Of a DNA stretch of 64,000 nt, positions 1 through 7,919 are shown piece after piece. A program made the position numbers and the translations under genes. Location: positions 310,001 to 374,000 of IMG/VR virus record IMGVR_UViG_3300036766_002289. The stretch is one strand, 5' to 3'. The notes under the pieces were generated by a model. That model was not told the DNA's origin. It saw nothing but the letters and a program-made list of their open reading frames with translations, and ran no database searches. How positions within the stretch are numbered: the first letter of the stretch is position 1; every line of letters starts with the position of its first letter.

Positions 1-57
1 CAAGCTAAAATCAAAGAATACGGGTGCGAATGGAGTTTGAAGCTGGTAGAATTATAG
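1..57 (+). CDS. 3' end of an array ORF truncated by the window start
   Basis: Open frame QAKIKEYGCEWSLKLVEL ending at TAG 55-57 in the left arm of the first repeat. Confidence 0.6.
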   Translation, partial: QAKIKEYGCEWSLKLVEL

Positions 58-89
58 CTTAGTTGTACCAATTAGGTTGTAATTAACCC

Positions 90-181
90 CAAACAGGAGC
101 AAGGTCATGCGTTATTGGATTCGTCACGAAGACCTCAAACAGGAGCAAGGTCATGCGTTATTGGATTCGTCACGAAGACCT
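90..181 (+). repeat. Exact 46-bp tandem duplication covering RBS and first codons
   Basis: caaacaggagcaaggtcatgcgttattggattcgtcacgaagacct at 90-135 and 136-181. Confidence 0.95.
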
Positions 182-398
182 CAAAACGGCAAATTATTGT
201 GACAACTATGATTGCCCGCTTGCACGGGCCGTCAAGCGGAAACATCCCCTCGTCCATGTCCAAGTCAATTCCCGCTATGTTTTCATGAACGGCAAGGCTT
301 ACCACATTGCCACGCCGTCCGCTGACAAGCTGCTGTCATGGTCATGCAAAGAAATCATTCTCGACAAGGGCTTCCATGTCCGTCTCAGTGCGGCCTAG
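153..398 (+). CDS. Array hypothetical protein, 81 aa; paralog of 919-1215
   Basis: AGGAG RBS; MRYWIR...TANY...DCPLARAVKRK...KGFHVRL. Confidence 0.85.
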   Translation: MRYWIRHEDLKTANYCDNYDCPLARAVKRKHPLVHVQVNSRYVFMNGKAYHIATPSADKLLSWSCKEIILDKGFHVRLSAA

Positions 399-481
399 TT
401 TCAGGGTTCGCCCAACCCTGGCTTTACCTTAGTTGTACCAATTAGGTTGTGATTTCTTACCCTTTACCTGGAGTCTTGACA

Positions 482-649
482 ATGGGCAATGCTTTCCGTC
501 TGGCCAAGCTGCTGGTGATCGAGAATCCCAATCGTTCCGCCAAGTCCATCCGAGAGGAAATCGAGAAGATGACGGGCATCAACCTCGATGGCCGCGTGAT
601 CGGCGGCGAGAAGCGCATCCTCATCTATCGCAAGGGCAAAGCGGCCTAA
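482..649 (+). CDS. Array hypothetical protein, 55 aa
   Basis: Repeat + GGAG + ATG 482 (MGNAFRLAKLL...KGKAA). Confidence 0.8.
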   Translation: MGNAFRLAKLLVIENPNRSAKSIREEIEKMTGINLDGRVIGGEKRILIYRKGKAA

Positions 650-694
650 GCCAAGGGGTCGCCCACCCTGGCTTAACCTTAATGGAGAAATCCC

Positions 695-871
695 ATGAAT
701 GAAGAACTCAAAATCAAGCTCCACGAAATGCTCGAATCGTATTCAAGTCAACTTGATACGATTTGGTATAACTCTGATTCGGGTTCGCACATGGATTGGT
801 GCCGTAGGCAACAAGCTGAGATTGCCGAACTCATTGCCGAACTCGAAGCTGTTGACGCGATTTGCTGGTAG
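695..871 (+). CDS. Array hypothetical protein, 58 aa (not in ORF track)
   Basis: GGAG RBS, MNEELKIKLHEMLES...EAVDAICW, stops just before next repeat. Confidence 0.8.
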   Translation: MNEELKIKLHEMLESYSSQLDTIWYNSDSGSHMDWCRRQQAEIAELIAELEAVDAICW

Positions 872-918
872 GCATAACTTAGTTGTACCAATTAGGTTGC
901 CCAAAACAGGAGAATACA

Positions 919-1215
919 ATGCGTTTTTGGATTCGTCTGGCTGACCTCCGAACGGCGAACTACAGTAGCAATACGGACTGCTTTTTGGCCCGCGCCATCA
1001 AGCGTAAAATCCCAAAGGCTAAGGTTCTGGTCCATCCCGATTTTGTCGAGGTGGGTAAAACTCACTACGCGATTGTCGGCAATGGAGTGGACCGACTCAA
1101 AGAGGACCATGACACCAAGGAAAAAGGCTTCCACGTCCGACTCCGTAAAGTGAGTGGCTGGCTAGAGTGTAACCAAGCGAAAGCCGCAATTGACCACATC
1201 AGGACGTTCAATTAG
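919..1215 (+). CDS. Array hypothetical protein, 98 aa; paralog of 153-398
   Basis: Repeat + AGGAG + MRFWIR...TANY...DCFLARAIKRK...KGFHVRL. Confidence 0.85.
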   Translation: MRFWIRLADLRTANYSSNTDCFLARAIKRKIPKAKVLVHPDFVEVGKTHYAIVGNGVDRLKEDHDTKEKGFHVRLRKVSGWLECNQAKAAIDHIRTFN

Positions 1216-1264
1216 CTTAGTTGTACCAATTAGGTTGTGATTCAACCCAAACAGGAGAACGGCC

Positions 1265-1393
1265 ATGTTTGAAGTCATTCGCAACGGCAAGGTTCTGTTC
1301 CGCAATGCTTCCTATCAGCGTTGTCTCCAATTCAAGGCCCGCCACAAGCTCAATGCCATCATTCGGCCCATGCCCCAAATGCTCGCGGCCTAA
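1265..1393 (+). CDS. Array hypothetical protein, 42 aa
   Basis: Repeat + AGGAG + MFEVIRNGKVLF...QMLAA. Confidence 0.75.
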   Translation: MFEVIRNGKVLFRNASYQRCLQFKARHKLNAIIRPMPQMLAA

Positions 1394-1445
1394 GCCAAGG
1401 GGTCGCCCACCCCTGGTTCTATACCCTAGTTGTACCGAGGTTCAC

Positions 1446-1652
1446 ATGCTTATTCCCCGCGCCGTAGTGTTTGATTCAAAAGGCAAAGCTCTTTGTGCTG
1501 GCAATCCCTGCAATGGTTACTCTCATCGCACCGACTGCCGCCATACGACCATGCACCTACCATCGGAACATTTCGATTTTATCGACGTGAACGTGGAAGG
1601 CAAGACTGAGGCCGAAATCATGTATGAAATCACGGCGGAATACCACATCTAA
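1446..1652 (+). CDS. Array hypothetical protein, 68 aa, Cys/His-containing
   Basis: Partial repeat + GAGG + MLIPRAVVFDSKG. Confidence 0.7.
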   Translation: MLIPRAVVFDSKGKALCAGNPCNGYSHRTDCRHTTMHLPSEHFDFIDVNVEGKTEAEIMYEITAEYHI

Positions 1653-1672
1653 GGGCCATTCAGGTCTGAGTT

Positions 1673-1809
1673 GAGAGTGGCTTAAAATAGGAGCAAACCT
1701 ATCCGTGGCCGCATTAACTTCGGTTAGTGCCCGCCCAAGAAAGTAACGGGAGCCAACGGGAAACACCCTCCAAAAGTGGATTACCAATGACTCATCAATA
1801 ACCGCTCTT
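1673..1809 (+). ncRNA. Putative structured RNA occupying an array slot
   Basis: No SD-led ORF; closing helix GAGAGUGG/CCGCUCUU, hairpin AUAGG-agcaaa-CCUAU, hairpin GCAUUAAC-UUCG-GUUAGUGC. Confidence 0.5.
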
Positions 1810-1860
1810 ACCTTAGTTGTACCAATTAGGTTGTGATTCCACCCCAACAGGAGCAAAGTC

Positions 1861-2067
1861 ATGCTGGTTCTCGACAATCCCAAAGACATTGCCGCCTTCC
1901 GTAAGTTGGCACTACGTAGTGCTTTAGGGCTGGAAATGAAGGGCTTCAAACGGCATGGACCGTCTTGCTTCTCCATCATCAAGGCCGAATTCGGGCTGAA
2001 GGGCAACAAGCAAAAGGTCTATGACCAATTCACGGCACTGCTCAAAGAGCAAAACATCCTAGTCTAA
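1861..2067 (+). CDS. Array hypothetical protein, 68 aa
   Basis: Repeat + AGGAG + ATG. Confidence 0.85.
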   Translation: MLVLDNPKDIAAFRKLALRSALGLEMKGFKRHGPSCFSIIKAEFGLKGNKQKVYDQFTALLKEQNILV

Positions 2068-2143
2068 GGGCAGGGGTCGCCCAACCCTGGCATACCTTAG
2101 TTGTACCAATTAGGGTGTGATTCAACCCTAACAGGAGCAAGCC

Positions 2144-2377
2144 ATGCAGCAACTCGCAATCTTCAAGGATGGCAAACCTTTCGCCAACGTGCCTTGCGAC
2201 AAGGATTACTATCTTAGCCCCATATACAACGTCACTGCTCTGCCGTATGAAGTCAAGCAGAAAATCTGGAACTTCATCGGTGGTCAATCGGCTGATACCA
2301 AACATGGCGGACGTGGTTGGGACGTTGGTGAGTGGTCGTGGGAGTGGAAGACTCCCTCCGTCCATCGGAAAGCTTAG
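2144..2377 (+). CDS. Array hypothetical protein, 77 aa
   Basis: Repeat + AGGAG + ATG; TAG stop lies inside next repeat. Confidence 0.85.
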   Translation: MQQLAIFKDGKPFANVPCDKDYYLSPIYNVTALPYEVKQKIWNFIGGQSADTKHGGRGWDVGEWSWEWKTPSVHRKA

Positions 2378-2414
2378 TTGTACCAATTAGGGTGTAATTA
2401 AGGAGAACAAACCA

Positions 2415-2612
2415 ATGTACTGTGCATTCTGCCATCGTCCTTGTGGCCAACGTGAATACTGTGCCGAAGTGTGCCACCAAGAGCATGATGACGAACTGAA
2501 GTCCTTTCAGCAAGGCAATGCCGATGAACTGCCCATTGGCGATAGTTCGCAAGGCGCAAGCCGATACGGGGAGTGGGAACCAATCGAGTGGGACGTAACA
2601 GGTGGACTATAG
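2415..2612 (+). CDS. Array protein, 65 aa, N-terminal CxxC..CxxxC zinc-binding motif, acidic tail
   Basis: AAGGAG RBS; MYCAFCHRPCGQREYCAEVCH. Confidence 0.8.
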   Translation: MYCAFCHRPCGQREYCAEVCHQEHDDELKSFQQGNADELPIGDSSQGASRYGEWEPIEWDVTGGL

Positions 2613-2722
2613 CCTAGTTGTACCAATTAAGCAAATGGAGGAACGAATGAAAACAGGGTGCTACGTGGAGACTCACGGCAAAGTCTATCCCGCAAATGTA
2701 GCTAGCGAAAGGCGTTACGGCC

Positions 2723-2935
2723 TTGGCTAGTTGCGTCCCGAACGCAATGAAGACCGTAGAGGGACTATGTGAGTTCTATTGCGTTCGGTACTACGTTTGC
2801 CTGGAAGACTTCAGAATTGCCGTATACAATGCCCATGATGACAATTACCATGTCTTTCGCTGGTCAGTCAACCGCTATGTCTTAACTGGCGTCGAAGACT
2901 CAGTATCCCAAACCCATAAGGTGGGGATATCTTAG
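2723..2935 (+). CDS. Array hypothetical protein (start uncertain; a 27-aa ORF at 2647-2730 precedes it)
   Basis: ORF ends at TAG inside next repeat; weak RBS. Confidence 0.45.
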   Translation: MASCVPNAMKTVEGLCEFYCVRYYVCLEDFRIAVYNAHDDNYHVFRWSVNRYVLTGVEDSVSQTHKVGIS

Positions 2936-2977
2936 TTGTACCAATTGGGTTGTGATTTCCCAATCAGGAGCATGAAC

Positions 2978-3103
2978 ATGTGGTGGAAGTGCTTTGCTGA
3001 CGGTTCCGAGTTTGATATCATCTATGCCAACAGCAAGGACGAAGCAATCCAATTCGCCCGCCTGCGTCATGGAGAAGCAATCTGGACTGCTCGCCCTTAC
3101 TAA
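2978..3103 (+). CDS. Array hypothetical protein, 41 aa
   Basis: Repeat + AGGAG + MWWKCFADGSEFDIIYANSKDEAIQFAR. Confidence 0.75.
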   Translation: MWWKCFADGSEFDIIYANSKDEAIQFARLRHGEAIWTARPY

Positions 3104-3121
3104 ACCCTAGTTGTACCAAAC

Positions 3122-3283
3122 ATGCTGCAACAAAAGATCGAACAGAAACGGCGACTTGCCGTCCTGCGTAAACGACTCAATCGCCTTCGACTGCGTTACT
3201 TCGATCATGAGGACGCGGGCAAGGCAACGAAACATCAGCGGCTTGTCACCAAACTACTCAAGGCCATTTCCAAGGTGCAATGA
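3122..3283 (+). CDS. Array basic protein, 53 aa
   Basis: ATG directly after partial repeat; MLQQKIEQKRRLAVLRKRLNRLRLR; stop overlaps next start (ATGA). Confidence 0.65.
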   Translation: MLQQKIEQKRRLAVLRKRLNRLRLRYFDHEDAGKATKHQRLVTKLLKAISKVQ

Positions 3284-3489
3284 TGTGTCTCTGCGGCGAT
3301 ACCTATTGCTGGTCATGCGGTCCTGCTCAAGGCAATGCCCACTGTGAAGTCTGCGGCAGCTGGTCCGAAGACGGGGGCTGCGAGAATCCCGCCGAATGCG
3401 ATGCCAAGGCCCGCGAAATGGACAAGCTTTACGCGGAGCAAGAACTGGAAGCAGAACGGTTGGCCAAGGACTATCATTGGATACCTTAG
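3280..3489 (+). CDS. Array Cys-rich zinc-binding protein, 69 aa
   Basis: CLCGDTYCWSCG...CEVCG...C...C; TAG inside next repeat. Confidence 0.8.
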   Translation: MMCLCGDTYCWSCGPAQGNAHCEVCGSWSEDGGCENPAECDAKAREMDKLYAEQELEAERLAKDYHWIP

Positions 3490-3531
3490 TTGTACCGATT
3501 AGGGTGTAATTCACCCTCATAGGAGCAAGCC

Positions 3532-3702
3532 ATGAGTAAGACCAAGCGATTGCGGCTCGAAGCACGACTAAGGCGAGTGTGGCGAGATATTCAACGGGCA
3601 TTTCGTGGTGGAACATCATTCGGAATCGACGCGCCCACCCTTTGGGCATGTGAACCCGAACTTGCTGCCGAATTCTTCGCCCTTCGCAAGCAGTTAGCTT
3701 AG
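3532..3702 (+). CDS. Array hypothetical protein, 56 aa
   Basis: Repeat + AGGAG + MSKTKRLRLEARL; TAG inside next repeat. Confidence 0.8.
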   Translation: MSKTKRLRLEARLRRVWRDIQRAFRGGTSFGIDAPTLWACEPELAAEFFALRKQLA

Positions 3703-3745
3703 TTGTACCAATTAGGGTGTGATTACCCCTAAACGGAGAACTGTC

Positions 3746-4000
3746 ATGCTCGAAGACAGCAATGCCCTAGTCCACCAAAAGAACACGATCATCGACCTAA
3801 TCGACTTTCATAGCTACGAGGAAGCCATTCTGCTCCTCGCCTTCACCAAAGAACTTTGGGAAGAGTGCAGCTACGGTTATAAGTGGAAAGAACTGCAAGA
3901 TCGACTGCTGACCACACTCAGAAGCCAGCAAGAGGAAAACACTCACTGGAAGCAAGTCAAATCGCTCCAAGCAATCGCACAAAGGGTAATCAAACTATAA
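3746..4000 (+). CDS. Array hypothetical protein, 84 aa
   Basis: Repeat + GGAG + ATG 3746. Confidence 0.8.
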   Translation: MLEDSNALVHQKNTIIDLIDFHSYEEAILLLAFTKELWEECSYGYKWKELQDRLLTTLRSQQEENTHWKQVKSLQAIAQRVIKL

Positions 4001-4004
4001 GAGG

Positions 4005-4032
4005 AAAAGGCAGGGTAAAACCTGCCTTTTTT
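4005..4032. terminator. Intrinsic terminator, probably bidirectional
   Basis: AAAAGGCAGG-gtaaaa-CCTGCCTTTTTT. Confidence 0.85.
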
Positions 4033-4125
4033 CATTTCAAATAGGAATTGGTACAACTATGTTTTAATAACTTATAGCTTAGTTGTACCAATTAGGGTGT
4101 AATGCAACCCTAACAGGAGCAAGTC

Positions 4126-4323
4126 ATGCGATTTGAAGTCTATGCCAAGTATGGCAATCGCTGGTCTTACAAGGGCATTTATCAGGCCCGCGATAGCCGA
4201 CTGGCGGCTTATCAGGCTCAATACTCCACTGGCCGTAACGTTCTCAAGGTGCGGCCCGAAGATTCGCGGGACAAGTTCCTCGTCTACCGCATCACTTCTG
4301 CCCCGACTGTCACGGCAGGATAG
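4126..4323 (+). CDS. Array hypothetical protein, 65 aa
   Basis: Repeat + AGGAG + ATG. Confidence 0.85.
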   Translation: MRFEVYAKYGNRWSYKGIYQARDSRLAAYQAQYSTGRNVLKVRPEDSRDKFLVYRITSAPTVTAG

Positions 4324-4376
4324 CCTAGTTGTACCAATTCAGTTGTGATTCACCCTTAACCCCTTGGAGTCAAGTC

Positions 4377-4619
4377 ATGGCCACTGTCCTCGCTACTGGT
4401 CTTACCGCCACGGTTCGCTACACGGAGGTCCGCTCCGAAGGCCCCAACGGGCGTCGGAAGCTCCTCACCGAAGTCCGCGTAATGGCGGGCCAATTCGAGG
4501 TCGCAACCAAGACGTTGGCTGGCCGTTGGAGCCAGCAACAGGCCATGCGGGAGTTCAAGCGACTCCCAAAGGGCTGGTCCGTCAAGGACGCGGCAATGGC
4601 ACTGCTGCCCGCCGCCTAG
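4377..4619 (+). CDS. Array hypothetical protein, 80 aa
   Basis: Repeat + GGAG + MATVLATG...ALLPAA. Confidence 0.8.
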   Translation: MATVLATGLTATVRYTEVRSEGPNGRRKLLTEVRVMAGQFEVATKTLAGRWSQQQAMREFKRLPKGWSVKDAAMALLPAA

Positions 4620-4700
4620 AGGTGGGGCCATGAGGCCCTTCCTGGTCTATACCCTAGTTGTACCAATTAGGGTGTAATTCCCCGAAACTGGAGAACAGTC

Positions 4701-4901
4701 ATGATTGCCCTTGAACATGCGGCGCAAATGGTCGCCAAACTGCGTCAAGTCGATCAGAATGACGCAATGGAACTGTTCTTCCACTTTGATGATGTTTTCA
4801 AACTCAGCGACATGTACCGCCCCGATGACAATGGCAAATATATCATCATGTTTGCTGACCTCTGCGGGTATGGTATCGCCACCAACGTCAAGATAGCCTA
4901 G
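4701..4901 (+). CDS. Array hypothetical protein, 66 aa
   Basis: Repeat + GGAG + ATG; TAG inside next repeat. Confidence 0.8.
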   Translation: MIALEHAAQMVAKLRQVDQNDAMELFFHFDDVFKLSDMYRPDDNGKYIIMFADLCGYGIATNVKIA

Positions 4902-4944
4902 TTGTACCAATTAGGTTGTGATTACCCCCTAACTGGAGAAGACC

Positions 4945-5205
4945 ATGCTCGAATCAATCCAGCAAGACTTCATCGACGAAGGCTATCAATGGCATGAACA
5001 CATTTTCAATGACGGTCATGCCGAGTGCATGATTGAATTCACGAAGGACAAAAGCCCGCAAGCTCTTTCAACTTACCCACGTCCTGCCGATTGCGTCGGT
5101 TGGGGACGCTTTCCCCGCCTTCACGCATGGCAGCAGGCCCACGACTGGCTTCGCCAGCAAATCATTCGGGCGCAGATAGATGAATATGATGACGCAAGCT
5201 GTTAG
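4945..5205 (+). CDS. Array hypothetical protein, 86 aa
   Basis: Repeat + GGAG + ATG. Confidence 0.85.
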   Translation: MLESIQQDFIDEGYQWHEHIFNDGHAECMIEFTKDKSPQALSTYPRPADCVGWGRFPRLHAWQQAHDWLRQQIIRAQIDEYDDASC

Positions 5206-5294
5206 GGGTGGACGAGGGGACTGCCAACCCTCGCCTGGTCTATACCTTAGTTGTACCAATTAGGGTGTGATTAACCCCTAAACGGAGAACAGTC

Positions 5295-5573
5295 ATGTAC
5301 TACCTGACCTTGACCACTGCCGAACGACACGCCATTGATTGGGTCGGGCACCGCTATGACCACGGTTACGACCTTTACAAGCTGCTATGGGTCGAATCGG
5401 AACAAACTGACAATTCCCTTGATTGGGACAGCGACGATGATATTACTTTCCGCATTCCCGAAGCGGTTAGCTGGAAAATCGCCATGATTGGCGAACAATG
5501 CGGGCACCTTTGGGATTGTTTCAGCAACGCGCTGGCTCTGAAGCTGAATGAATTTTGTATGGAAATTGTTTAG
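5295..5573 (+). CDS. Array hypothetical acidic protein, 92 aa
   Basis: Repeat + GGAG + ATG. Confidence 0.85.
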   Translation: MYYLTLTTAERHAIDWVGHRYDHGYDLYKLLWVESEQTDNSLDWDSDDDITFRIPEAVSWKIAMIGEQCGHLWDCFSNALALKLNEFCMEIV

Positions 5574-5678
5574 GGGTGGGTTGGGGGAATGCAAACCCCA
5601 TCCTGGCTTTATAGCCTAGTTGTACCAATTAGGTTGTAATTCACCCCAAACCCCATCGCTCTGAGCCACGAGGACTAC

Positions 5679-5816
5679 ATGGAGGCCATTGACCGCGAAG
5701 ACGACACGGACGAAAGCCATCTCTTCGACAACACCGACTATGATCCGCTGGACGACGGTATCCTCGAAGACGAGGACGACGAGTACGAAGTCGAATTCGA
5801 GGAAGAAGACGACTGA
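5679..5816 (+). CDS. Very acidic 45-aa protein (25 D/E), possible DNA mimic
   Basis: MEAIDREDDTDESHLFDNTDYDPLDDGILEDEDDEYEVEFEEEDD; GAGGA upstream. Confidence 0.65.
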   Translation: MEAIDREDDTDESHLFDNTDYDPLDDGILEDEDDEYEVEFEEEDD

Positions 5817-5906
5817 CCTTCACGGCGGGGACTTCCACCCGCCACCTGGCTTCATACCTTAGTTGTACCAATTAAGGTATGATTCACCCCCAAACGGAGC
5901 CAAGTC

Positions 5907-6149
5907 ATGAAGCCGACAACGCAACCGTGGCGAACGTATGAACCAACATGGGCCGAACGTTTGGCCCGCACGACGTTGACCAAATGGCAATTGATGGACG
6001 CTTTCTTTGGCAGTGGTCGTCTCACCGTTAACGGTATTGAAGTCGGACTGGCTTCGATGCAACGTGAAGACGGAAGCGGTAGTTCTTTCAATCTGATTCT
6101 CAACAAGGGCCTCAACAGCTACGCTTGCTATTGTCGAACAACGGATTGA
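5907..6149 (+). CDS. Array hypothetical protein, 80 aa
   Basis: Repeat + GGAG + ATG. Confidence 0.85.
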   Translation: MKPTTQPWRTYEPTWAERLARTTLTKWQLMDAFFGSGRLTVNGIEVGLASMQREDGSGSSFNLILNKGLNSYACYCRTTD

Positions 6150-6212
6150 GAGGTAATTCTTTACCTTAGTTGTACTAATTAAGGTGTAAGATAACCCTAA
6201 CGGAGAACTGCA

Positions 6213-6389
6213 ATGCACGCTACTAAGGAACGGAAGAAGTCGGTCAAGGAAGGCTTCACCATTTCAACCCAAGTCATTTCGGGCCGTATGCCGATCAGCG
6301 TTCAAATCATGATGGCGGCACGTTGCCGTCGTATGGAAGACAAGCGGCGGAAGCTCAAGGCGAGAGATGAACGCCGCCTAAGTGATTGA
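6213..6389 (+). CDS. Array basic protein, 58 aa
   Basis: Repeat + GGAG + MHATKERKKSVKEG. Confidence 0.75.
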   Translation: MHATKERKKSVKEGFTISTQVISGRMPISVQIMMAARCRRMEDKRRKLKARDERRLSD

Positions 6390-6398
6390 GAGGCCAAC

Positions 6399-6506
6399 AT
6401 GGTAGATGGAGAGAAGCGTAAGCGACGTTCAGCTACCATTGCACGCACTACATGGTATGCTAAGTGGCGTTGCTATCGTATGTCCAAACGATTCGGCTAT
6501 ATCTAA
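6399..6506 (+). CDS. Small basic protein, 35 aa
   Basis: GAGG RBS; MVDGEKRKRRSATIARTTWYAKWRCYR. Confidence 0.55.
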   Translation: MVDGEKRKRRSATIARTTWYAKWRCYRMSKRFGYI

Positions 6507-6509
6507 TGG

Positions 6510-6880
6510 GCTATTCAGCCCTAACCCATCTCTATGTACAACTAAGCAATGCACTTATAACAATGCCTCTAATCTATAATGCCTCTAATAGATTAGTGCC
6601 TCACCCATTATAACTTATAAGTTAGTTGTACTATACATTGTAACAAAATAAAGAAAGGAGAAATTATGTTCAAAAAAGTTTGAAAAGGTTGAAGAAAAAG
6701 GCACCCCCGTACCCGCCATACCTGTCTTCTTATAGAAAAAGACTTGTTGCAAAATTAACGCCCACCAATTTTTGATTTTCCCCCTATAAGCTAAAAATTT
6801 ATTCAAAATGCGATTTTCAAAAATTGCGGCACCAAAATTTTCCCCTATTGCCTATAAGGTTCTAATTTGGTAGAATTTTG
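6510..6880. other. AT-rich non-coding junction; candidate replication origin or genome-end junction
   Basis: Short direct repeats (aatgcctctaat x2; caccaa..tttcccctat x2), inverted plus direct array core, GC content and GC skew change across it. Confidence 0.4.
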
Positions 6881-6916
6881 GCAAGGAAGTGGTTAGGGAT
6901 AGGGATTTATACATGT

Positions 6917-7210
6917 ATGGCTAGATTAAGCAGTCGGGAGAAGGATTTGGTTGCGTCAACATTTCCGTGTTACAGTGGTTATGCGACGACGGAAGAGGTG
7001 AAGGCAGCGAAATTAAAGGCTAGGGGTCATTACTGGCATGAGCCAGAGTATTACAATTTTTGTGCAATGTCTCCAAAGGGGCACAAGAAGTATTTTGATT
7101 ACTGTCATCATCCTGGGGAGATTGAGTATACAAAATGTTCTTGTTCCAGTGAAGATGACGAATCTAATTTTTACAGAATGAAAAAGGAAGCAAAGGAATG
7201 GACGAAATAG
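6917..7210 (+). CDS. Hypothetical protein
   Basis: ORF; ATG 6917 preferred over the TTG at 6878. Confidence 0.6.
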   Translation: MARLSSREKDLVASTFPCYSGYATTEEVKAAKLKARGHYWHEPEYYNFCAMSPKGHKKYFDYCHHPGEIEYTKCSCSSEDDESNFYRMKKEAKEWTK

Positions 7211-7248
7211 TATCAATTTAAGATAAACATGAACTTGCGGTAGCAAGT

Positions 7249-7919
7249 TCATTTTAACAGGGCTTGTTCGAAGGTAAAATTGCATAGTTGTTGTTCATGG
7301 ATGCCTTTAAATTGGGAGATAAAGCCAGAGGGGTGGGTAGGGCCGCTTTTTTCAAGTTCTTTATAGAAGGCGGCGTCATGGTTTTTATCTAGGTAGTCAG
7401 GGAACCAGGCATTGAATTGTTTATTGCAGGATAGACGCCAGGCTACTTGGGAGGCGTCAACGATATTGTAGGGTGAGATAGGGTTGGTTTGGTAATTAAG
7501 ATAGTATTCAAGGTCAACTGGACGGTTGATGGCATCTAGGTAGTATTCTTTTAGTGGGTCATAAAGGATGACGTTGGAGTAGCAGCTATTCACTTCTGGG
7601 TTTTTGGTAAAATAATCATTAAGGTTTTGGAGATAATCGGGGTGTAGGGCATCATCATCGCAGAGCATGATGGCGATATCGGCTGGGGATTCTTTAAGGA
7701 CTTTATTGACAACGAGACCTAAAGAAGACCCTTTTTTTGTTCTTTGGTATCGGTATTGCGGTAATAGGTATGTGGGATATTGATTTTAGCGGGTTTAGGG
7801 GAGTTATCATCATGGAAGAAGAGGGTCCAGTCATGGTAGGACGAGTTTTGGATGCTATGGAGGGCATTCTGGACTATTTCGGGTCTATTGTAATAGAGGA
7901 GTAGGATAAGTATATGCAT
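7249..7919 (-). CDS. GT2-family glycosyltransferase split by a -1 frameshift at A_AAA_AAG (7737-7731)
   Basis: N-half YYNRPE...SIQNSSYHDWTLFFHDDNS; C-half IMLCDDDALHPDYL; joined by a -1 shift. Confidence 0.75.

What the first reader, a model, noticed from the sequence alone, without database searches (positions are those of the whole stretch)
54..6631. Gene-cassette array: ~25 tiny genes, most headed by the same hairpin repeat
Seen: a fixed unit repeats every ~170-600 bp as [repeat]-[C-rich spacer + GGAG RBS]-[35-98 aa ORF]-[often a GC hairpin]. All units are on one strand and the array continues past the window start. TAGTTGTAC is invariant in all 24 copies. Nine ORFs take their TAG stop from the left arm of the next repeat, so gene and repeat are fused, much as integron cassettes overlap attC. 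The cargo is unrelated: zinc-finger, basic, acidic, one RNA-like slot. Known analogies: PeSL (promoter-early stem-loop) cassettes that shuffle modules in T4-type phages, SPO1 host-takeover modules, RNase III sites in the T7 early region, integron arrays. None has this sequence to my knowledge. Inference: a phage cassette system in which one element both expresses (T[G/A]T[G/A]AT -10-like box in the right arm) and delimits or recombines host-takeover or anti-defence genes.
Basis: partly seen in the sequence, partly recalled or inferred. Interest (0 to 1): 0.92.

Follow-up and report, generated by a model that had tools for sequence, protein, structure and literature searches.

The report
Phage-specific promoter cassette array
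This 6.6-kb stretch is the dense end of a 72-kb block in a ~590-kb T4-like huge phage where about a hundred tiny genes each carry the same invariant 19-base promoter-like signal; it is a non-standard version of the promoter-terminator cassettes that T4-type phages use to express and shuffle accessory genes.

Summary
Window 60-6631 has 22 same-strand and 2 inverted copies of TAGTTGTAC (0.39 expected), each same-strand copy but the last heading 31-98-aa ORFans. It is the GC-rich end of a larger system: 101 plus-strand copies in the 390-kb record, which is part of a ~590-kb T4-like huge-phage contig.

The shared unit is a compact, all-or-none ~19-nt motif with no -35 element. The start codon lies exactly 10 nt after TAC in 25 copies, mostly without an SD. 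It lies 30-53 nt after TAC, behind GGAG, in 18 of the window's copies. Three tRNAs and a structured sRNA start 12 nt after it, and positions +10/+11 are Y/R in every class.

My reading is a phage-specific single-element promoter, with the start about 8-11 nt after TAC and a quarter of the mRNAs leaderless. The "hairpin" is a marginal inverted repeat found in only 24 copies.

Two relatives carry sister motifs that share TGTAC and the same geometry. Cassette content differs between relatives, with breakpoints at the repeats.

This is a non-sigma70 variant of T4-type PeSL cassettes. I found no integrase or RNA polymerase gene, but four sigma-like genes. No transcript data exist, so the promoter role and the start site are inferred.

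The parts
1..6631 (+). Distal, densest and most GC-rich part of a one-strand early-type gene block. The block runs from about G000 244 kb to 316.6 kb, and window position 1 is G000 310001.
53..421 (+). Cassette 1. Motif 60-68, long form. A 46-bp tandem duplication (90-135 and 136-181) leaves a frameshifted 31-aa copy (107-202) and the intact ORF 153-398 (81 aa). GC hairpin at 401-421.
   Evidence: the duplication is absent in the relative from sample X2
423..870 (+). Cassette 2. Motif 430-438. ORF 482-649 (55 aa), GC hairpin 650-672, then a second ORF 695-870 (57 aa) that has its own RBS but no motif.
873..1215 (+). Cassette 3. Motif 880-888. ORF 919-1215 (98 aa), a paralogue of 153-398. Its TAG stop lies in the flank of the next motif.
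1211..1417 (+). Cassette 4. Motif 1218-1226. ORF 1265-1393 (42 aa, basic). GC hairpin 1394-1417.
1420..1813 (+). Cassette 5, short form. Motif 1427-1435, with the ATG exactly 10 nt after TAC. ORF 1446-1652 (68 aa). The 161 nt that follow (1653-1813) are non-coding.
1807..2091 (+). Cassette 6. Motif 1814-1822. ORF 1861-2067 (68 aa), with a 61%-identical homologue in L165. GC hairpin 2069-2090.
2091..2377 (+). Cassette 7. Motif 2098-2106. ORF 2144-2377 (77 aa); its stop is the TAG of the next motif. In relative L165 this cassette is replaced by two unrelated ORFs.
2368..2612 (+). Cassette 8. Motif 2375-2383. ORF 2415-2612 (65 aa, Cys-rich). Homologues occur in L165, G2 and LR756511.1.
2608..2935 (+). 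Cassette 9. Motif 2615-2623. ORFs 2635-2730 (31 aa) and 2747-2935 (62 aa).
2926..3103 (+). Cassette 10. Motif 2933-2941. ORF 2972-3103 (43 aa).
3101..3489 (+). Cassette 11, short form. Motif 3108-3116, with the ATG 5 nt after TAC. ORFs 3122-3283 (53 aa, basic) and the overlapping 3280-3489 (69 aa, 8 Cys).
3480..3702 (+). Cassette 12. Motif 3487-3495. ORF 3532-3702 (56 aa, basic).
3693..4033 (+). Cassette 13. Motif 3700-3708. ORF 3746-4000 (84 aa). A canonical GC stem with a T-run (bidirectional terminator) lies within 4001-4033.
4051..4059 (-). Inverted motif copy facing the terminator. It would give a transcript of about 45 nt that consists mostly of the terminator hairpin. L165 has the same arrangement.
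4073..4323 (+). Cassette 14. Motif 4080-4088. ORF 4126-4323 (65 aa).
4319..4643 (+). Cassette 15. Motif 4326-4334. ORF 4377-4619 (80 aa). GC hairpin 4620-4643.
4648..4901 (+). Cassette 16. Motif 4655-4663. ORF 4701-4901 (66 aa); its stop is the TAG of the next motif.
4892..5246 (+). Cassette 17. Motif 4899-4907. ORF 4945-5205 (86 aa). GC hairpin within 5206-5246.
5241..5604 (+). Cassette 18. Motif 5248-5256. ORF 5295-5573 (92 aa), 65% identical to a G2 array ORF. GC hairpin 5578-5604.
5610..5843 (+). Cassette 19. Motif 5617-5625. ORF 5679-5816 (45 aa, pI 4.1, very acidic). GC hairpin 5824-5843.
5853..6149 (+). Cassette 20. Motif 5860-5868. ORF 5907-6149 (80 aa). Homologues occur in G2 and LR756511.1.
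6160..6506 (+). Cassette 21. Motif 6167-6175. ORFs 6213-6389 (58 aa) and 6399-6506 (35 aa), both basic.
6536..6544 (-). Inverted motif copy at the end of the array, followed on its own strand by a small hairpin.
6616..6631 (+). Last plus-strand copy. No real ORF follows it. It opens onto an AT-rich non-coding stretch of a few hundred nt.

Best explanation
**What it is.** The repeat is a promoter, not a recombination site or an RNA hairpin. Its core is about 19 nt, wTAsCyTAGTTGTACCAa. A weaker purine-rich patch and a pyrimidine-purine step follow 10/11 nt after the C of TAC.

**How it is read (inferred).** The host RNA polymerase probably reads it after being re-targeted by a phage-encoded specificity factor. 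The candidates are:
- two gp55-like sigma fragments that lack region 4;
- a 170-aa sigma with regions 2 and 4, which itself sits behind a sigma70-type promoter;
- a 276-aa sigma with regions 2 and 4.

Transcription would start 8-11 nt after TAC.

**Types of transcription unit.**
- In a quarter of the units the ATG sits at that point, so the mRNA is leaderless or nearly so.
- tRNAs and one sRNA start 2 nt further on.
- In the window's array a roughly 27-nt C-rich leader with GGAG follows. There the promoter is embedded in an imperfect inverted repeat, possibly an operator for array-specific control.

**Cassette structure and turnover.**
- About 40% of the window's cassettes end in a GC hairpin that probably acts as a weak terminator. 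Each cassette is then a self-contained promoter-gene-terminator module.
- Roughly 100 near-identical 20-60-nt repeats lie in one orientation. They serve as substrates for homologous recombination, so cassettes are gained, lost, replaced and reordered at the repeats, as with PeSLs of T4-type phages.
- The two TAGs in the motif, in two reading frames, close ORFs that run into it.

**Shown versus inferred.** Shown:
- the anatomy;
- the fixed distances;
- the sister motifs in relatives;
- the repeat-bounded differences in cassette content.

Inferred:
- promoter activity;
- the start site;
- the identity of the factor;
- the recombination mechanism.
For: **Motif properties**
- It is all-or-none. 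With a weight matrix, 98 plus-strand and 4 minus-strand sites score 16 bits or more. No site without the exact 9-mer passes, and a shuffled genome gives none.
- Conservation spans -7 to +11 around the 9-mer only. Nothing is conserved further upstream.
- A sigma70-type promoter scan of window 1-7200 finds 5 sites against 8.1 expected, and none lies in front of a cassette.

**Fixed distances**
- The distance from TAC to the start codon is bimodal. It is exactly 10 nt in 23-25 copies, including ORFs of 224 and 365 aa. The start of the 365-aa ORF is confirmed by its G2 orthologue. The second peak is at 35-40 nt with GGAG.
- Position e+10 is a pyrimidine in 82% of copies and e+11 a purine in 90%. 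This also holds in copies without an ATG there.
- Three tRNAs start exactly 12 nt after TAC.
- An sRNA of about 90 nt has a 13-bp closing stem that starts at e+13. It folds with z -4.0 and ends in a T-run.

**Context that favours a promoter**
- Canonical terminators (GC stem plus T-run) lie directly upstream of some copies, at G000 307139, 309456 and window 4001-4033, and hairpins precede most G2 copies (54 of 80). Back-to-back divergent copies also occur.

**Sister motifs in relatives**
- G2 has cTAATTGCAATTGTACCA in 80 copies, with distance peaks at 10 and 31-40 nt and 91% Y / 93% R at e+10/e+11.
- LR756511.1 has TTATAAAGCTGTACtwa; AGCTGTAC occurs 134 times, with distance peaks at 10-11 and 25-39 nt.

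**Candidate factors**
- Four sigma-like genes are present.
- A TTGACT-N17-TATACT promoter lies in front of the 170-aa sigma gene.

**Published parallels**
- The phiEco32 gp36 sigma lacks region 4 and reads a single element, tAATGTAtA, with the start 6-8 bp downstream (PMC8948821).
- AR9 and phiKZ early promoters are compact conserved elements followed by 6 N and a purine start (PMC5312081).

**Cassette turnover**
- L165 keeps the two neighbours of window cassette 2144-2377 but has two unrelated ORFs between them. The breakpoints lie in the promoter copies.
- A contig from sample X2 joins window 1409 to 2700 with 195 nt of flank, and X2 depth is 0-8.5 over 801-1200 and 1401-2600.
- Only 9 of 25 window ORFs have G2 homologues, and these are in scrambled order. 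Six have LR756511.1 homologues, five of them collinear.
Against: **Gaps**
- There are no transcript data. No RNA run holding this sequence could be listed, so promoter activity and the start site rest on geometry alone.
- No factor has been tied to the motif. The 276-aa and 170-aa sigmas were not found in the incomplete G2 fragment.
- The gp55-like assignment is weak (E = 3e-4).

**Observations that fit poorly**
- The motif geometry does not match standard -35/-10 or ECF spacing.
- The U-tracts after most hairpins are poor. The strict terminator scan finds only one in the array.
- Hairpin energy upstream of copies is not enriched over the GC-rich local background.
- ORF 695-870 follows a hairpin without a motif, so at least some read-through must occur.
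- In G2 and LR756511.1, tRNAs do not sit at a fixed distance from the motif.

**Limits of the comparative evidence**
- The strain-level evidence comes from short metagenomic contigs that break inside the repeats. Joints with short flanks are unreliable.
- Breakpoints at repeats do not show how the recombination happened.
Confidence: 0.68

Rival explanations
1. The phage carries an unrecognised RNA polymerase of its own, virion-borne or early. That enzyme reads the motif in the way N4 virion polymerase reads a hairpin with a 3-nt loop, or phiKZ/AR9 virion polymerases read a compact element followed by 6 N and a purine.
For: - The 9-mer is invariant over about 100 copies, and no degenerate copies exist. 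This is typical of phage polymerase promoters (AR9, PMC5312081).
- The element is compact and contiguous, and a purine start follows at a fixed distance.
- In the long form an 8-bp stem with a 3-nt loop is centred about 12 nt before the inferred start. From memory, this resembles the N4 geometry.
- Several large ORFs have no detectable family, for example 1201 aa in G6 and 686, 654 and 721 aa in G000.
Against: - PF00940, PF00562 and PF00623 give no significant match: none in G000, G2 or (PF00562, PF00623) G6, and in the complete 595-kb relative only a sub-threshold 11-bit PF00940 hit (E 0.03). The PF00940 control rang in no genome, so that one test is weak.
- No DxDGD-type signature occurs in any ORF of 250 aa or more.
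- PHROG and Pfam scans of the largest ORFs gave no polymerase.
- The hairpin is absent from 77 of 101 copies and is unstable as DNA.
- The stem forms better on the non-template strand.
- About 13 kb of the source contig was never examined.
Confidence: 0.14
2. The motif is an RNA signal. A phage endoribonuclease cuts long read-through transcripts 10-11 nt after TAC. This would release monocistronic, partly leaderless mRNAs and tRNA/sRNA precursors, as RNase III sites do in the T7 early region.
For: - All copies share the orientation of the genes.
- The distance to functional 5' ends is fixed.
- The long form can fold as RNA into an 8-bp stem ending 2 nt before the putative cut (-4.9 kcal/mol).
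- ORFs run into the motif, so it is transcribed from upstream in at least some cassettes.
Against: - Strong intrinsic terminators lie directly upstream of several copies, and divergent back-to-back copies would need antisense transcripts.
- No other promoter class that could feed 72 kb of genes is visible. The sigma70 scan is below expectation.
- A 19-nt sequence-specific RNA site with no structure in three quarters of its copies would be unusual.
- Y(-1)R(+1) is the usual signature of transcription initiation.
Confidence: 0.08
3. The repeats are sites of a dedicated site-specific recombination system, integron-like or otherwise, and expression is secondary.
For: - The array is one-stranded and built of unrelated small ORFs bounded by a repeat.
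- Stops are donated by the repeat.
- Replacement and loss are bounded by the repeats.
Against: - No tyrosine recombinase was found in the 390-kb record.
- Copies head tRNAs, an sRNA and larger genes scattered over 290 kb.
- The spacing to start codons is exact.
- The motif has no attC-like bipartite structure.
- Homologous recombination between 20-60-nt repeats, as shown for PeSLs (PMC2839356, PMC4122927), is sufficient.
Confidence: 0.04
4. The signal is an ordinary host sigma70 early promoter whose -10 is the TGTGAT/TGTAAT box downstream of the repeat.
For: TGTAAT matches TATAAT at 5 of 6 positions and is conserved in the long-form copies.
Against: - No -35 element lies at 16-18 nt from the box. 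TTGTAC is only 9 nt away.
- In 25 copies the ATG of the gene lies where the box would be, so a start downstream of it is impossible.
- G2 and LR756511.1 have no such box but share the same geometry.
Confidence: 0.03

Closest known systems
PeSL (promoter-early stem-loop) cassettes of T4-type phages (Arbiol 2010, PMC2839356; Comeau 2014, PMC4122927)
   Same: - The phage has T4-like structural genes.
- A one-strand hyperplastic region is full of ORFans.
- The repeated composite unit is stem-loop, promoter, SD and ATG.
- The repeats sit at insertions, deletions and replacements between related phages.
   Different: - The promoter is not sigma70-like. It has no -35-N17--10 arrangement and is a contiguous, invariant 19-nt element.
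- A stem-loop is present at only about 40% of the window's units.
- A quarter of the units genome-wide have the ATG at a fixed 10 nt and no SD.
- The same element also drives tRNAs and an sRNA.
- There are about 100 copies in a ~590-kb genome.
- Mini-circles could not be tested.
Single-element promoters of phage sigma factors lacking region 4: phiEco32 gp36 (tAATGTAtA, start 6-8 bp downstream; PMC8948821) and T4 gp55 late promoters (TATAAATA; from memory)
   Same: - There is one compact conserved element and no -35.
- The inferred start lies 6-9 nt after the end of TTGTACCA(A).
- The core contains TGTA.
- The phage encodes gp55-like sigma fragments without region 4, in two paralogous copies.
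   Different: - The element is longer (19 nt).
- It drives about 100 early-type small genes rather than middle or late genes.
- No link between any sigma and the motif has been shown.
Virion-polymerase early promoters of phiKZ-like jumbo phages (AR9: AAATATATATTAT-6N-G; PMC5312081, PMC8244752)
   Same: - The elements are highly conserved and intolerant of mismatches.
- A purine start follows at a fixed short distance.
- There are dozens of copies in front of early genes.
   Different: - No beta/beta'-like genes were detected here or in the complete relative.
- The motif is not AT-rich.
- The phiKZ study detected no leaderless transcripts, whereas here a leaderless class is inferred.
N4 virion RNA polymerase hairpin promoters (from memory: 5-7-bp stem, 3-nt loop)
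   Same: The long-form copies have an 8-bp inverted repeat with a 3-nt loop centred about 12 nt before the inferred start.
   Different: - The repeat is absent from 77 of 101 copies.
- It has two G.T pairs and is unstable as single-stranded DNA.
- It forms better on the non-template strand.
- No N4-like polymerase gene was found.
Integron cassette arrays
   Same: - The array is one-stranded and holds unrelated small genes separated by a repeat.
- ORF ends overlap the repeat.
   Different: - There is no integrase and no attI/attC architecture.
- Every cassette has its own promoter.
- The repeat also occurs outside the array.

Membership tests
PeSL cassettes of T4-type phages | Located in a hyperplastic, ORFan-rich region of a phage with T4-like core genes | tested here: met
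   - Gp23, gp20, gp17 and baseplate-wedge homologues are present.
- None of the 25 window ORFs has a Pfam or PHROG hit.
PeSL cassettes of T4-type phages | Sigma70-like early promoter (-35, 17-nt spacer, -10) | tested here: not met
   - Nothing is conserved upstream of -7 relative to the 9-mer.
- The sigma70 scan gives 5 sites against 8.1 expected, none before a cassette.
PeSL cassettes of T4-type phages | Stem-loop acting as a terminator just upstream of the promoter | tested here: inconclusive
   - GC hairpins (-10 to -17 kcal/mol) lie at 8 motif-preceding junctions in the window, plus one between the two ORFs of cassette 2, and one junction has a canonical terminator.
- The U-tracts are weak.
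- Hairpin energy is not enriched over the local background.
- In G2, 54 of 80 copies have such a hairpin.
PeSL cassettes of T4-type phages | Repeats coincide with indels and replacements between related phages | tested here: met
   - L165 shows a replacement of the cassette at window 2144-2377.
- Sample X2 has a joint from 1409 to 2700 and gaps in depth.
- Content comparisons with G2 and LR756511.1 differ.
PeSL cassettes of T4-type phages | Mini-circles formed by exchange between neighbouring repeats | not testable with these tools
   Only assembled contigs were available. The go-back joints have short flanks that lie inside repeats.
Integron | IntI-type tyrosine recombinase next to the array | tested here: not met
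   PF00589 gives no match in G000, while the control rang in 14 of 14 genomes. G6 was not searched.
Integron | Promoterless cassettes expressed from one upstream Pc | tested here: not met
   Each cassette carries the motif at a fixed distance from its start.
N4-type hairpin promoters | Giant virion RNA polymerase gene | tested here: not met
   No polymerase family was found among the large ORFs. The sensitivity of this test is limited.
N4-type hairpin promoters | Stable 5-7-bp stem with a 3-nt loop in every promoter | tested here: not met
   - Only 24 of 101 copies have 6 or more contiguous pairs.
- As DNA the fold is -1 kcal/mol with z -0.45.
Single-element promoters of region-4-less phage sigmas (gp55 / gp36 type) | Phage encodes a sigma fragment with region 2 only | tested here: met
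   - G000 78810-79139 matches PF04542 at 18.7 bits and phrog_234 (late sigma) at E = 3e-4.
- Paralogues occur in G6, G2 (two copies) and LR756511.1 (two copies).
- The scores are weak.
Single-element promoters of region-4-less phage sigmas (gp55 / gp36 type) | One conserved element, no -35, start 6-8 bp downstream | tested here: inconclusive
   The single element and the lack of a -35 are shown. The start site is only inferred from the Y/R step and the fixed distances.
phiKZ-like virion-polymerase promoters | Split beta/beta'-like polymerase genes | tested here: not met
   PF00562 and PF00623 give no match in G000, G6, G2 or LR756511.1. Very divergent homologues could escape these models.

The most novel reading that the evidence does not exclude
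A clade of ~600-kb T4-like huge phages that lack any recognisable RNA polymerase may run more than 100 transcription units from an all-or-none promoter.

- A phage-encoded specificity factor would read this promoter. That factor could be a duplicated gp55-like sigma, or a polymerase not yet recognised.
- The core TGTAC is kept across the clade, but the 8-10 nt upstream of it have been rewritten in each lineage.
- The system would start a quarter of its mRNAs exactly at the AUG.
- The same repeats would act as recombination joints that build an ORFan array at the far end of the early region. That array is codon-shifted (GC3 0.58 against 0.31 in structural genes), and its GC gradient could record either cassette age or dependence on host tRNAs.
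Probability: 0.3. Interest if true: 0.75.

Novelty: new variant of a known kind. Interest (0 to 1): 0.58.

Why it matters
- **A testable regulatory code for uncultured huge phages.** Their gene regulation is essentially unknown. Here the code can be read from sequence alone: an invariant motif marks about a hundred units and appears to place the 5' end to within a few nucleotides.
- **Candidate early genes.** The motif singles out a likely early gene set (timing is not shown), which could hold host-takeover or anti-defence genes. It also marks small RNAs and tRNAs under the same control.
- **A natural experiment in promoter specificity.** Sister motifs in two relatives share the core but differ upstream. 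This can be paired with four sigma-like genes.
- **A wider reach for the PeSL idea.** If confirmed, promoters that double as recombination joints would extend beyond sigma70 promoters and to the largest phage genomes.
- **A rare leaderless programme.** It would also be an example of a phage in which leaderless mRNAs are systematic and hard-wired.

Tried and rejected
**Searches for the same DNA**
- A near-identity search of the array against GenBank phages found nothing.
- Exact-pattern scans of IMG/VR gave only single chance hits.
- The metagenome scan gave one useful contig, L165. The multi-copy hit L176 is a coding tandem repeat.

**Polymerase hunt**
- No significant match for PF00940, PF00562 or PF00623 in G000, G2 or LR756511.1 (one sub-threshold 11-bit PF00940 hit), nor for PF00562/PF00623 in G6.
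- Pfam and PHROG scans of the largest ORFs found no polymerase.
- PDB sequence searches of four unknown ORFs found nothing informative.
- A language-model look-up of the 1201-aa ORF was uninformative.
- A DxDGD regex found nothing.

**Ideas rejected**
- Stop-codon recoding. An amber-suppressor tRNA exists, but TAG-as-sense gives no special gain in ORF coverage.
- A second over-represented word, TTGTAAGTG. It is a coding repeat in giant fibre-like genes, not a signal.
- A downstream leader stem (TTAGGGT/ACCCTAA). It is present in only about 10 of about 25 long-form copies, has weak z-scores, and is not conserved in G2.
- A MotA-box reading of aGCTTa. The spacing to the TGTRAT box is 15 nt rather than 12 +/- 1, and the reading is impossible for short-form copies.
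- T4-type TATAAATA late promoters. They are not enriched.

**Other dead ends**
- No RNA-seq run could be listed.
- Rfam has no match in window 1-7500.
- A homologue search for ORF 5295-5573 found only the ORF itself.
- I did not run the complex predictor on sigma plus DNA. Its sequence specificity for DNA is too weak to decide anything.

Full report
**1. The observation**

TAGTTGTAC occurs 25 times in the window against 0.39 expected. Twenty-two plus-strand copies lie between 60 and 6623, spaced 175-456 nt apart. Two inverted copies lie at 4051 and 6536.

All but the last plus-strand copy are followed by one or two small ORFs. I count 25 ORFs of 31-98 aa, all on the plus strand. Eighteen copies carry a C-rich spacer with GGAG, and the ATG lies 30-53 nt after the C of TAC. 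I call that C position "e".

Nine ORFs stop inside the repeat (the 4323 stop read):
- five on the TAG of the 9-mer;
- three on the TAG 5 nt upstream;
- one on a TAA 7 nt upstream.

GC-rich hairpins of -10 to -17 kcal/mol sit at 8 junctions just upstream of a motif copy, and a ninth lies between the two ORFs of cassette 2. A further junction has a canonical terminator. The cargo is unrelated apart from one paralogous pair. None of the ORFs has a Pfam or PHROG family.

**2. Where the window lies**

The window is G000:310001-374000 of a 390,039-bp IMG/VR record. The record has T4-type gp23, gp20 (with an intein), gp17 and baseplate-wedge genes. It carries 48 tRNA genes by ARAGORN and uses the standard genetic code.

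The record is the right-hand part of a 590,099-bp JGI sediment contig. A second IMG/VR record from the same metagenome (G6, 187 kb) is very probably its left-hand part. The "provirus" label therefore looks like a mis-split of one huge-phage genome.

**3. The motif genome-wide**

G000 has 101 plus-strand and 6 minus-strand copies. Eighty-five of the plus-strand copies lie between 244 and 317 kb. The window's array is only the distal end of a 72-kb one-strand block of small genes.

- Conservation spans -7 to +11 around the 9-mer, giving wTAsCyTAGTTGTACCAa. Nothing further upstream is conserved.
- A weight-matrix scan finds 98 plus-strand and 4 minus-strand sites. No site lacks the exact 9-mer, and a shuffled genome gives none. 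The signal is all-or-none.

**4. Geometry**

The distance from e to the start codon is bimodal.

- It is exactly 10 nt in 23-25 copies, two thirds of which have no SD-like sequence. These include ORFs of 224 and 365 aa. The start of the 365-aa ORF is confirmed by its orthologue in a relative.
- The second peak is at 35-40 nt with GGAG.

In every class, position e+10 is a pyrimidine (82%) and e+11 a purine (90%). Copies with no ATG there give 78% and 87%.

Three tRNAs begin exactly 12 nt after e. ARAGORN calls all three, and Rfam confirmed the one it was run on and reported. One of the three was not listed by Rfam in its region. A structured RNA of about 90 nt has a 13-bp closing stem that begins at e+13. 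It folds with z -4.0 and ends in a T-run.

These facts have three consequences:
1. The RNA 5' end must lie at or before e+11.
2. The conserved purine-rich patch at e+6 to e+9 cannot be an SD. It lies 1-4 nt from the ATG in short-form units and about 27 nt from it in long-form units, which have a real GGAG.
3. A Y(-1)R(+1) step is the usual mark of initiation.

I infer a start site at e+8 to e+11. Short-form units would then be leaderless or nearly so. Long-form units would have a leader of about 27 nt. tRNAs and the sRNA would have a leader of about 2 nt.

**5. Promoter or RNA site?**

Several observations favour a promoter.
- Canonical intrinsic terminators lie directly upstream of several copies: G000 307139 and 309456, window 4001-4033, and many in the relative G2.
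- Copies occur back-to-back on opposite strands.
- No other promoter class is visible. The sigma70 scan of window 1-7200 gives 5 sites against 8.1 expected, and none precedes a cassette.

An RNA-processing signal remains possible but is less likely. No RNA-seq run holding the array could be listed, so the point cannot be settled here.

**6. The hairpin**

RNAalifold on 20 long-form copies predicts CTTAGTTG-TAC-CAATTAGG. This is 8 pairs, two of them G.U, at -4.9 kcal/mol, with no covariation because the columns are invariant.
- As DNA it is unstable (-1 kcal/mol, z -0.45).
- Only 24 of 101 copies have 6 or more contiguous pairs, all between 300 and 316 kb. The usual state is 3 pairs.

A second stem in the leader (TTAGGGT/ACCCTAA) occurs in about 10 of the ~25 long-form copies, has weak z-scores, and is not kept in G2.

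The hairpin is therefore an add-on of the array class and not the core. It could be an operator for a dimeric regulator, but that is speculation.

In short-form copies the ATG of the gene occupies that position, so the box cannot be the -10.

**7. Relatives**

I found relatives with the terminase protein.

| Relative | Size | Terminase identity | Motif | Copies | Distance peaks (nt) | Y / R at e+10 / e+11 |
|---|---|---|---|---|---|---|
| G2 (IMG/VR contig) | 340 kb | 65% | cTAATTGCAATTGTACCA | 80 | 10 and 31-40 | 91% / 93% |
| LR756511.1 (complete uncultured-phage GenBank record) | 595 kb | 67% | TTATAAAGCTGTACtwa | 134 (AGCTGTAC) | 10-11 and 25-39 | no clear step (62% / 58%) |

- G2 also has terminator hairpins with the same TCGCCCA loop as G000.
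- LR756511.1 also has a GC-rich dense array, at 0.9-19 kb.
- The common core is TGTAC. The 8-10 nt upstream of it differ and are nearly invariant within each genome.
- Four other relatives, all fragments, show no enrichment.

This pattern fits a conserved machinery whose specificity determinant evolves with the phage.

**8. What reads the motif?**

I found no RNA polymerase.
- PF00940, PF00562 and PF00623 gave no significant match in G000, G2 or the complete LR756511.1, nor PF00562/PF00623 in G6; the one PF00940 hit in LR756511.1 is sub-threshold.
- Pfam, PHROG and PDB searches of the largest ORFs found none.
- No DxDGD signature occurs in any long ORF.

The clade does encode four sigma-like proteins.
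- A 276-aa sigma and a 170-aa sigma each have regions 2 and 4. Orthologues in LR756511.1 are 38% and 53% identical.
- Two gp55-like fragments have region 2 only (phrog_234, E = 3e-4). They occur in two copies each in G000+G6, G2 and LR756511.1.
- The 170-aa sigma gene is preceded by TTGACT-N17-TATACT, a good sigma70 promoter. That fits an early gene that could switch the polymerase to the motif.

Published precedents match the architecture. The phiEco32 gp36 sigma lacks region 4 and reads a single element, tAATGTAtA, with the start 6-8 bp downstream (PMC8948821). AR9 and phiKZ virion polymerases read compact invariant elements followed by 6 N and a purine (PMC5312081 and PMC8244752).

Host core polymerase plus a phage sigma is my preferred reading. 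A hidden phage polymerase is the main rival.

**9. Cassette turnover**

- **L165, a 1.6-kb metagenome contig.** It carries six copies of the 9-mer (five same-strand, one inverted). It keeps homologues of window ORFs 1861-2067 (61% aa identity) and 2415-2612 (51%) in the same order. Between them it has two unrelated ORFs in place of window ORF 2144-2377. The homology ends inside the promoter copies on both sides.
- **Sample X2, another sediment sample.** One contig joins window 1409 to 2700 with 195 nt of flank and 53 other letters between. X2 depth is 0-8.5 over 801-1200 and 1401-2600 but about 40-50 elsewhere. X2 also lacks the 46-bp tandem duplication at 90-181. Joints with flanks under 30 nt are contig ends inside repeats, and I ignore them.
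- **G2.** Nine of the 25 window ORFs have homologues in the G2 array, in scrambled order. The region just upstream (G000 294.6-308.6 kb) is collinear with G2.
- **LR756511.1.** Six window ORFs have homologues there. Five lie in its array and are collinear, with unshared cassettes interspersed.

That test is not met, so a role of the repeats as recombination joints is supported by comparison. The mechanism is not shown. No tyrosine recombinase was found. Homologous exchange between the repeats, as described for PeSLs (PMC2839356; PMC4122927), would be sufficient.

**10. Comparison with known systems**

The array works like PeSL cassettes. It shares the T4-like phage, the hyperplastic ORFan region, the composite stem-loop/promoter/SD unit, and the indels at the repeats. 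It fails the PeSL feature of a sigma70-type promoter, and only about 40% of the window's units have the stem-loop. It adds a fixed-distance class without an SD and drives tRNAs and an sRNA.

It is not an integron, not an N4-type hairpin promoter, and not a phiKZ-type system by the features I could test. I rate it a new variant of a known kind.

**11. An unexplained extra**

GC3 rises along the early block from 0.37 (244-270 kb) to 0.58 (310-316.7 kb). Structural genes have 0.31. G2 shows the same rise, from 0.48 to 0.69, and LR756511.1 has a GC-rich array.

This may reflect adaptation of the earliest genes to host tRNAs in a phage that carries about 58 tRNAs of its own. It may instead reflect the foreign origin and age of the cassettes. 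I could not tell which.

**12. Verdict**

The feature is real, larger than reported, and best read as a phage-specific promoter that doubles as a recombination joint. My confidence is about 0.8 in the promoter reading, about 0.6 in the start site and the leaderless class, about 0.6 in repeat-mediated shuffling, and at most 0.5 in any particular factor. Interest is moderate to high.

Noticed in passing
G000 244-317 kb (window 1-6700 is the end of this stretch); G2 reverse complement 3-65 kb; LR756511.1 0-20 kb: There is a monotonic GC3 gradient along the early gene block. It rises from 0.37 to 0.58 in G000 and from 0.48 to 0.69 in G2, against 0.31 in structural genes. The array reaches 50% GC in a 39% GC genome.
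   Followed up: partly
G000 170512-170586: A tRNA with anticodon CTA (amber suppressor; ARAGORN labels it Pyl) occurs in a genome that otherwise appears to use the standard code. Both TAGs of the promoter motif would be readable by it.
   Followed up: partly
G000 159161-159275 (locus L008 161-275): A motif copy is followed at e+13 by a structured RNA of about 90 nt. It has a 13-bp closing stem, z -4.0 and a T-run, and no Rfam family was looked for. It lies about 1 kb upstream of the 276-aa sigma gene.
   Followed up: partly
window 90-181: A perfect 46-bp tandem duplication covers the RBS and the first codons of ORF 153-398. It creates a frameshifted 31-aa copy. The related strain in sample X2 lacks it.
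   Followed up: yes
window 4001-4088 and L165 1575-1641: A bidirectional terminator is faced by an inverted motif copy and then a forward copy. The inverted copy would make a tiny RNA that is little more than the terminator hairpin. A relative has the same arrangement.
   Followed up: partly
window 401-421, 652-672, 1396-1417, 2069-2090; many junctions in G2: Cassette-end hairpins in G000 and G2 share the loop TCGCCCA. In G000 a conserved CCTGG(C/T)TTyATAsC tail follows them. This suggests a repeated element in its own right.
   Followed up: no
JGI contig Ga0373622_0000005 (590,099 bp); IMG/VR records G000 and G6: IMG/VR lists two 'proviruses' (390 kb and 187 kb) from one metagenome. Gene coordinates place G000 at about 200-590 kb of a single 590-kb contig. 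The whole contig is probably one huge-phage genome, like the 595-kb relative.
   Followed up: partly
G000 372396-374927 and 126371-128659: Inteins are present in the gp20 portal gene and in a C-methyltransferase gene; the latter also has a LAGLIDADG domain.
   Followed up: no
G000 161952-163583: A protein with WGR and PARP catalytic domains is encoded about 0.9 kb downstream of the 276-aa sigma gene. It could be an ADP-ribosylating modifier of host proteins, as Alt and Mod are in T4.
   Followed up: no
G000 83585-95392: Two giant ORFs (2482 and 1428 aa) are built of repeats that carry the word TTGTAAGTG (24 of its 29 copies lie in this 83-99 kb region). The first has tail-fibre-like PHROG hits, and the region is at 45% GC.
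   Followed up: partly
window 6640-6910: An AT-rich stretch of a few hundred nt with no convincing ORF lies immediately after the last motif copy. A small plus-strand ORF follows and, from about window 9.6 kb, a block of opposite-strand genes. It could be a regulatory or replication region.
   Followed up: no
window 5679-5816: A 45-aa protein with pI 4.1 consists almost entirely of Asp and Glu. It has the composition of a DNA-mimic anti-restriction protein but no detectable homology to one.
   Followed up: no
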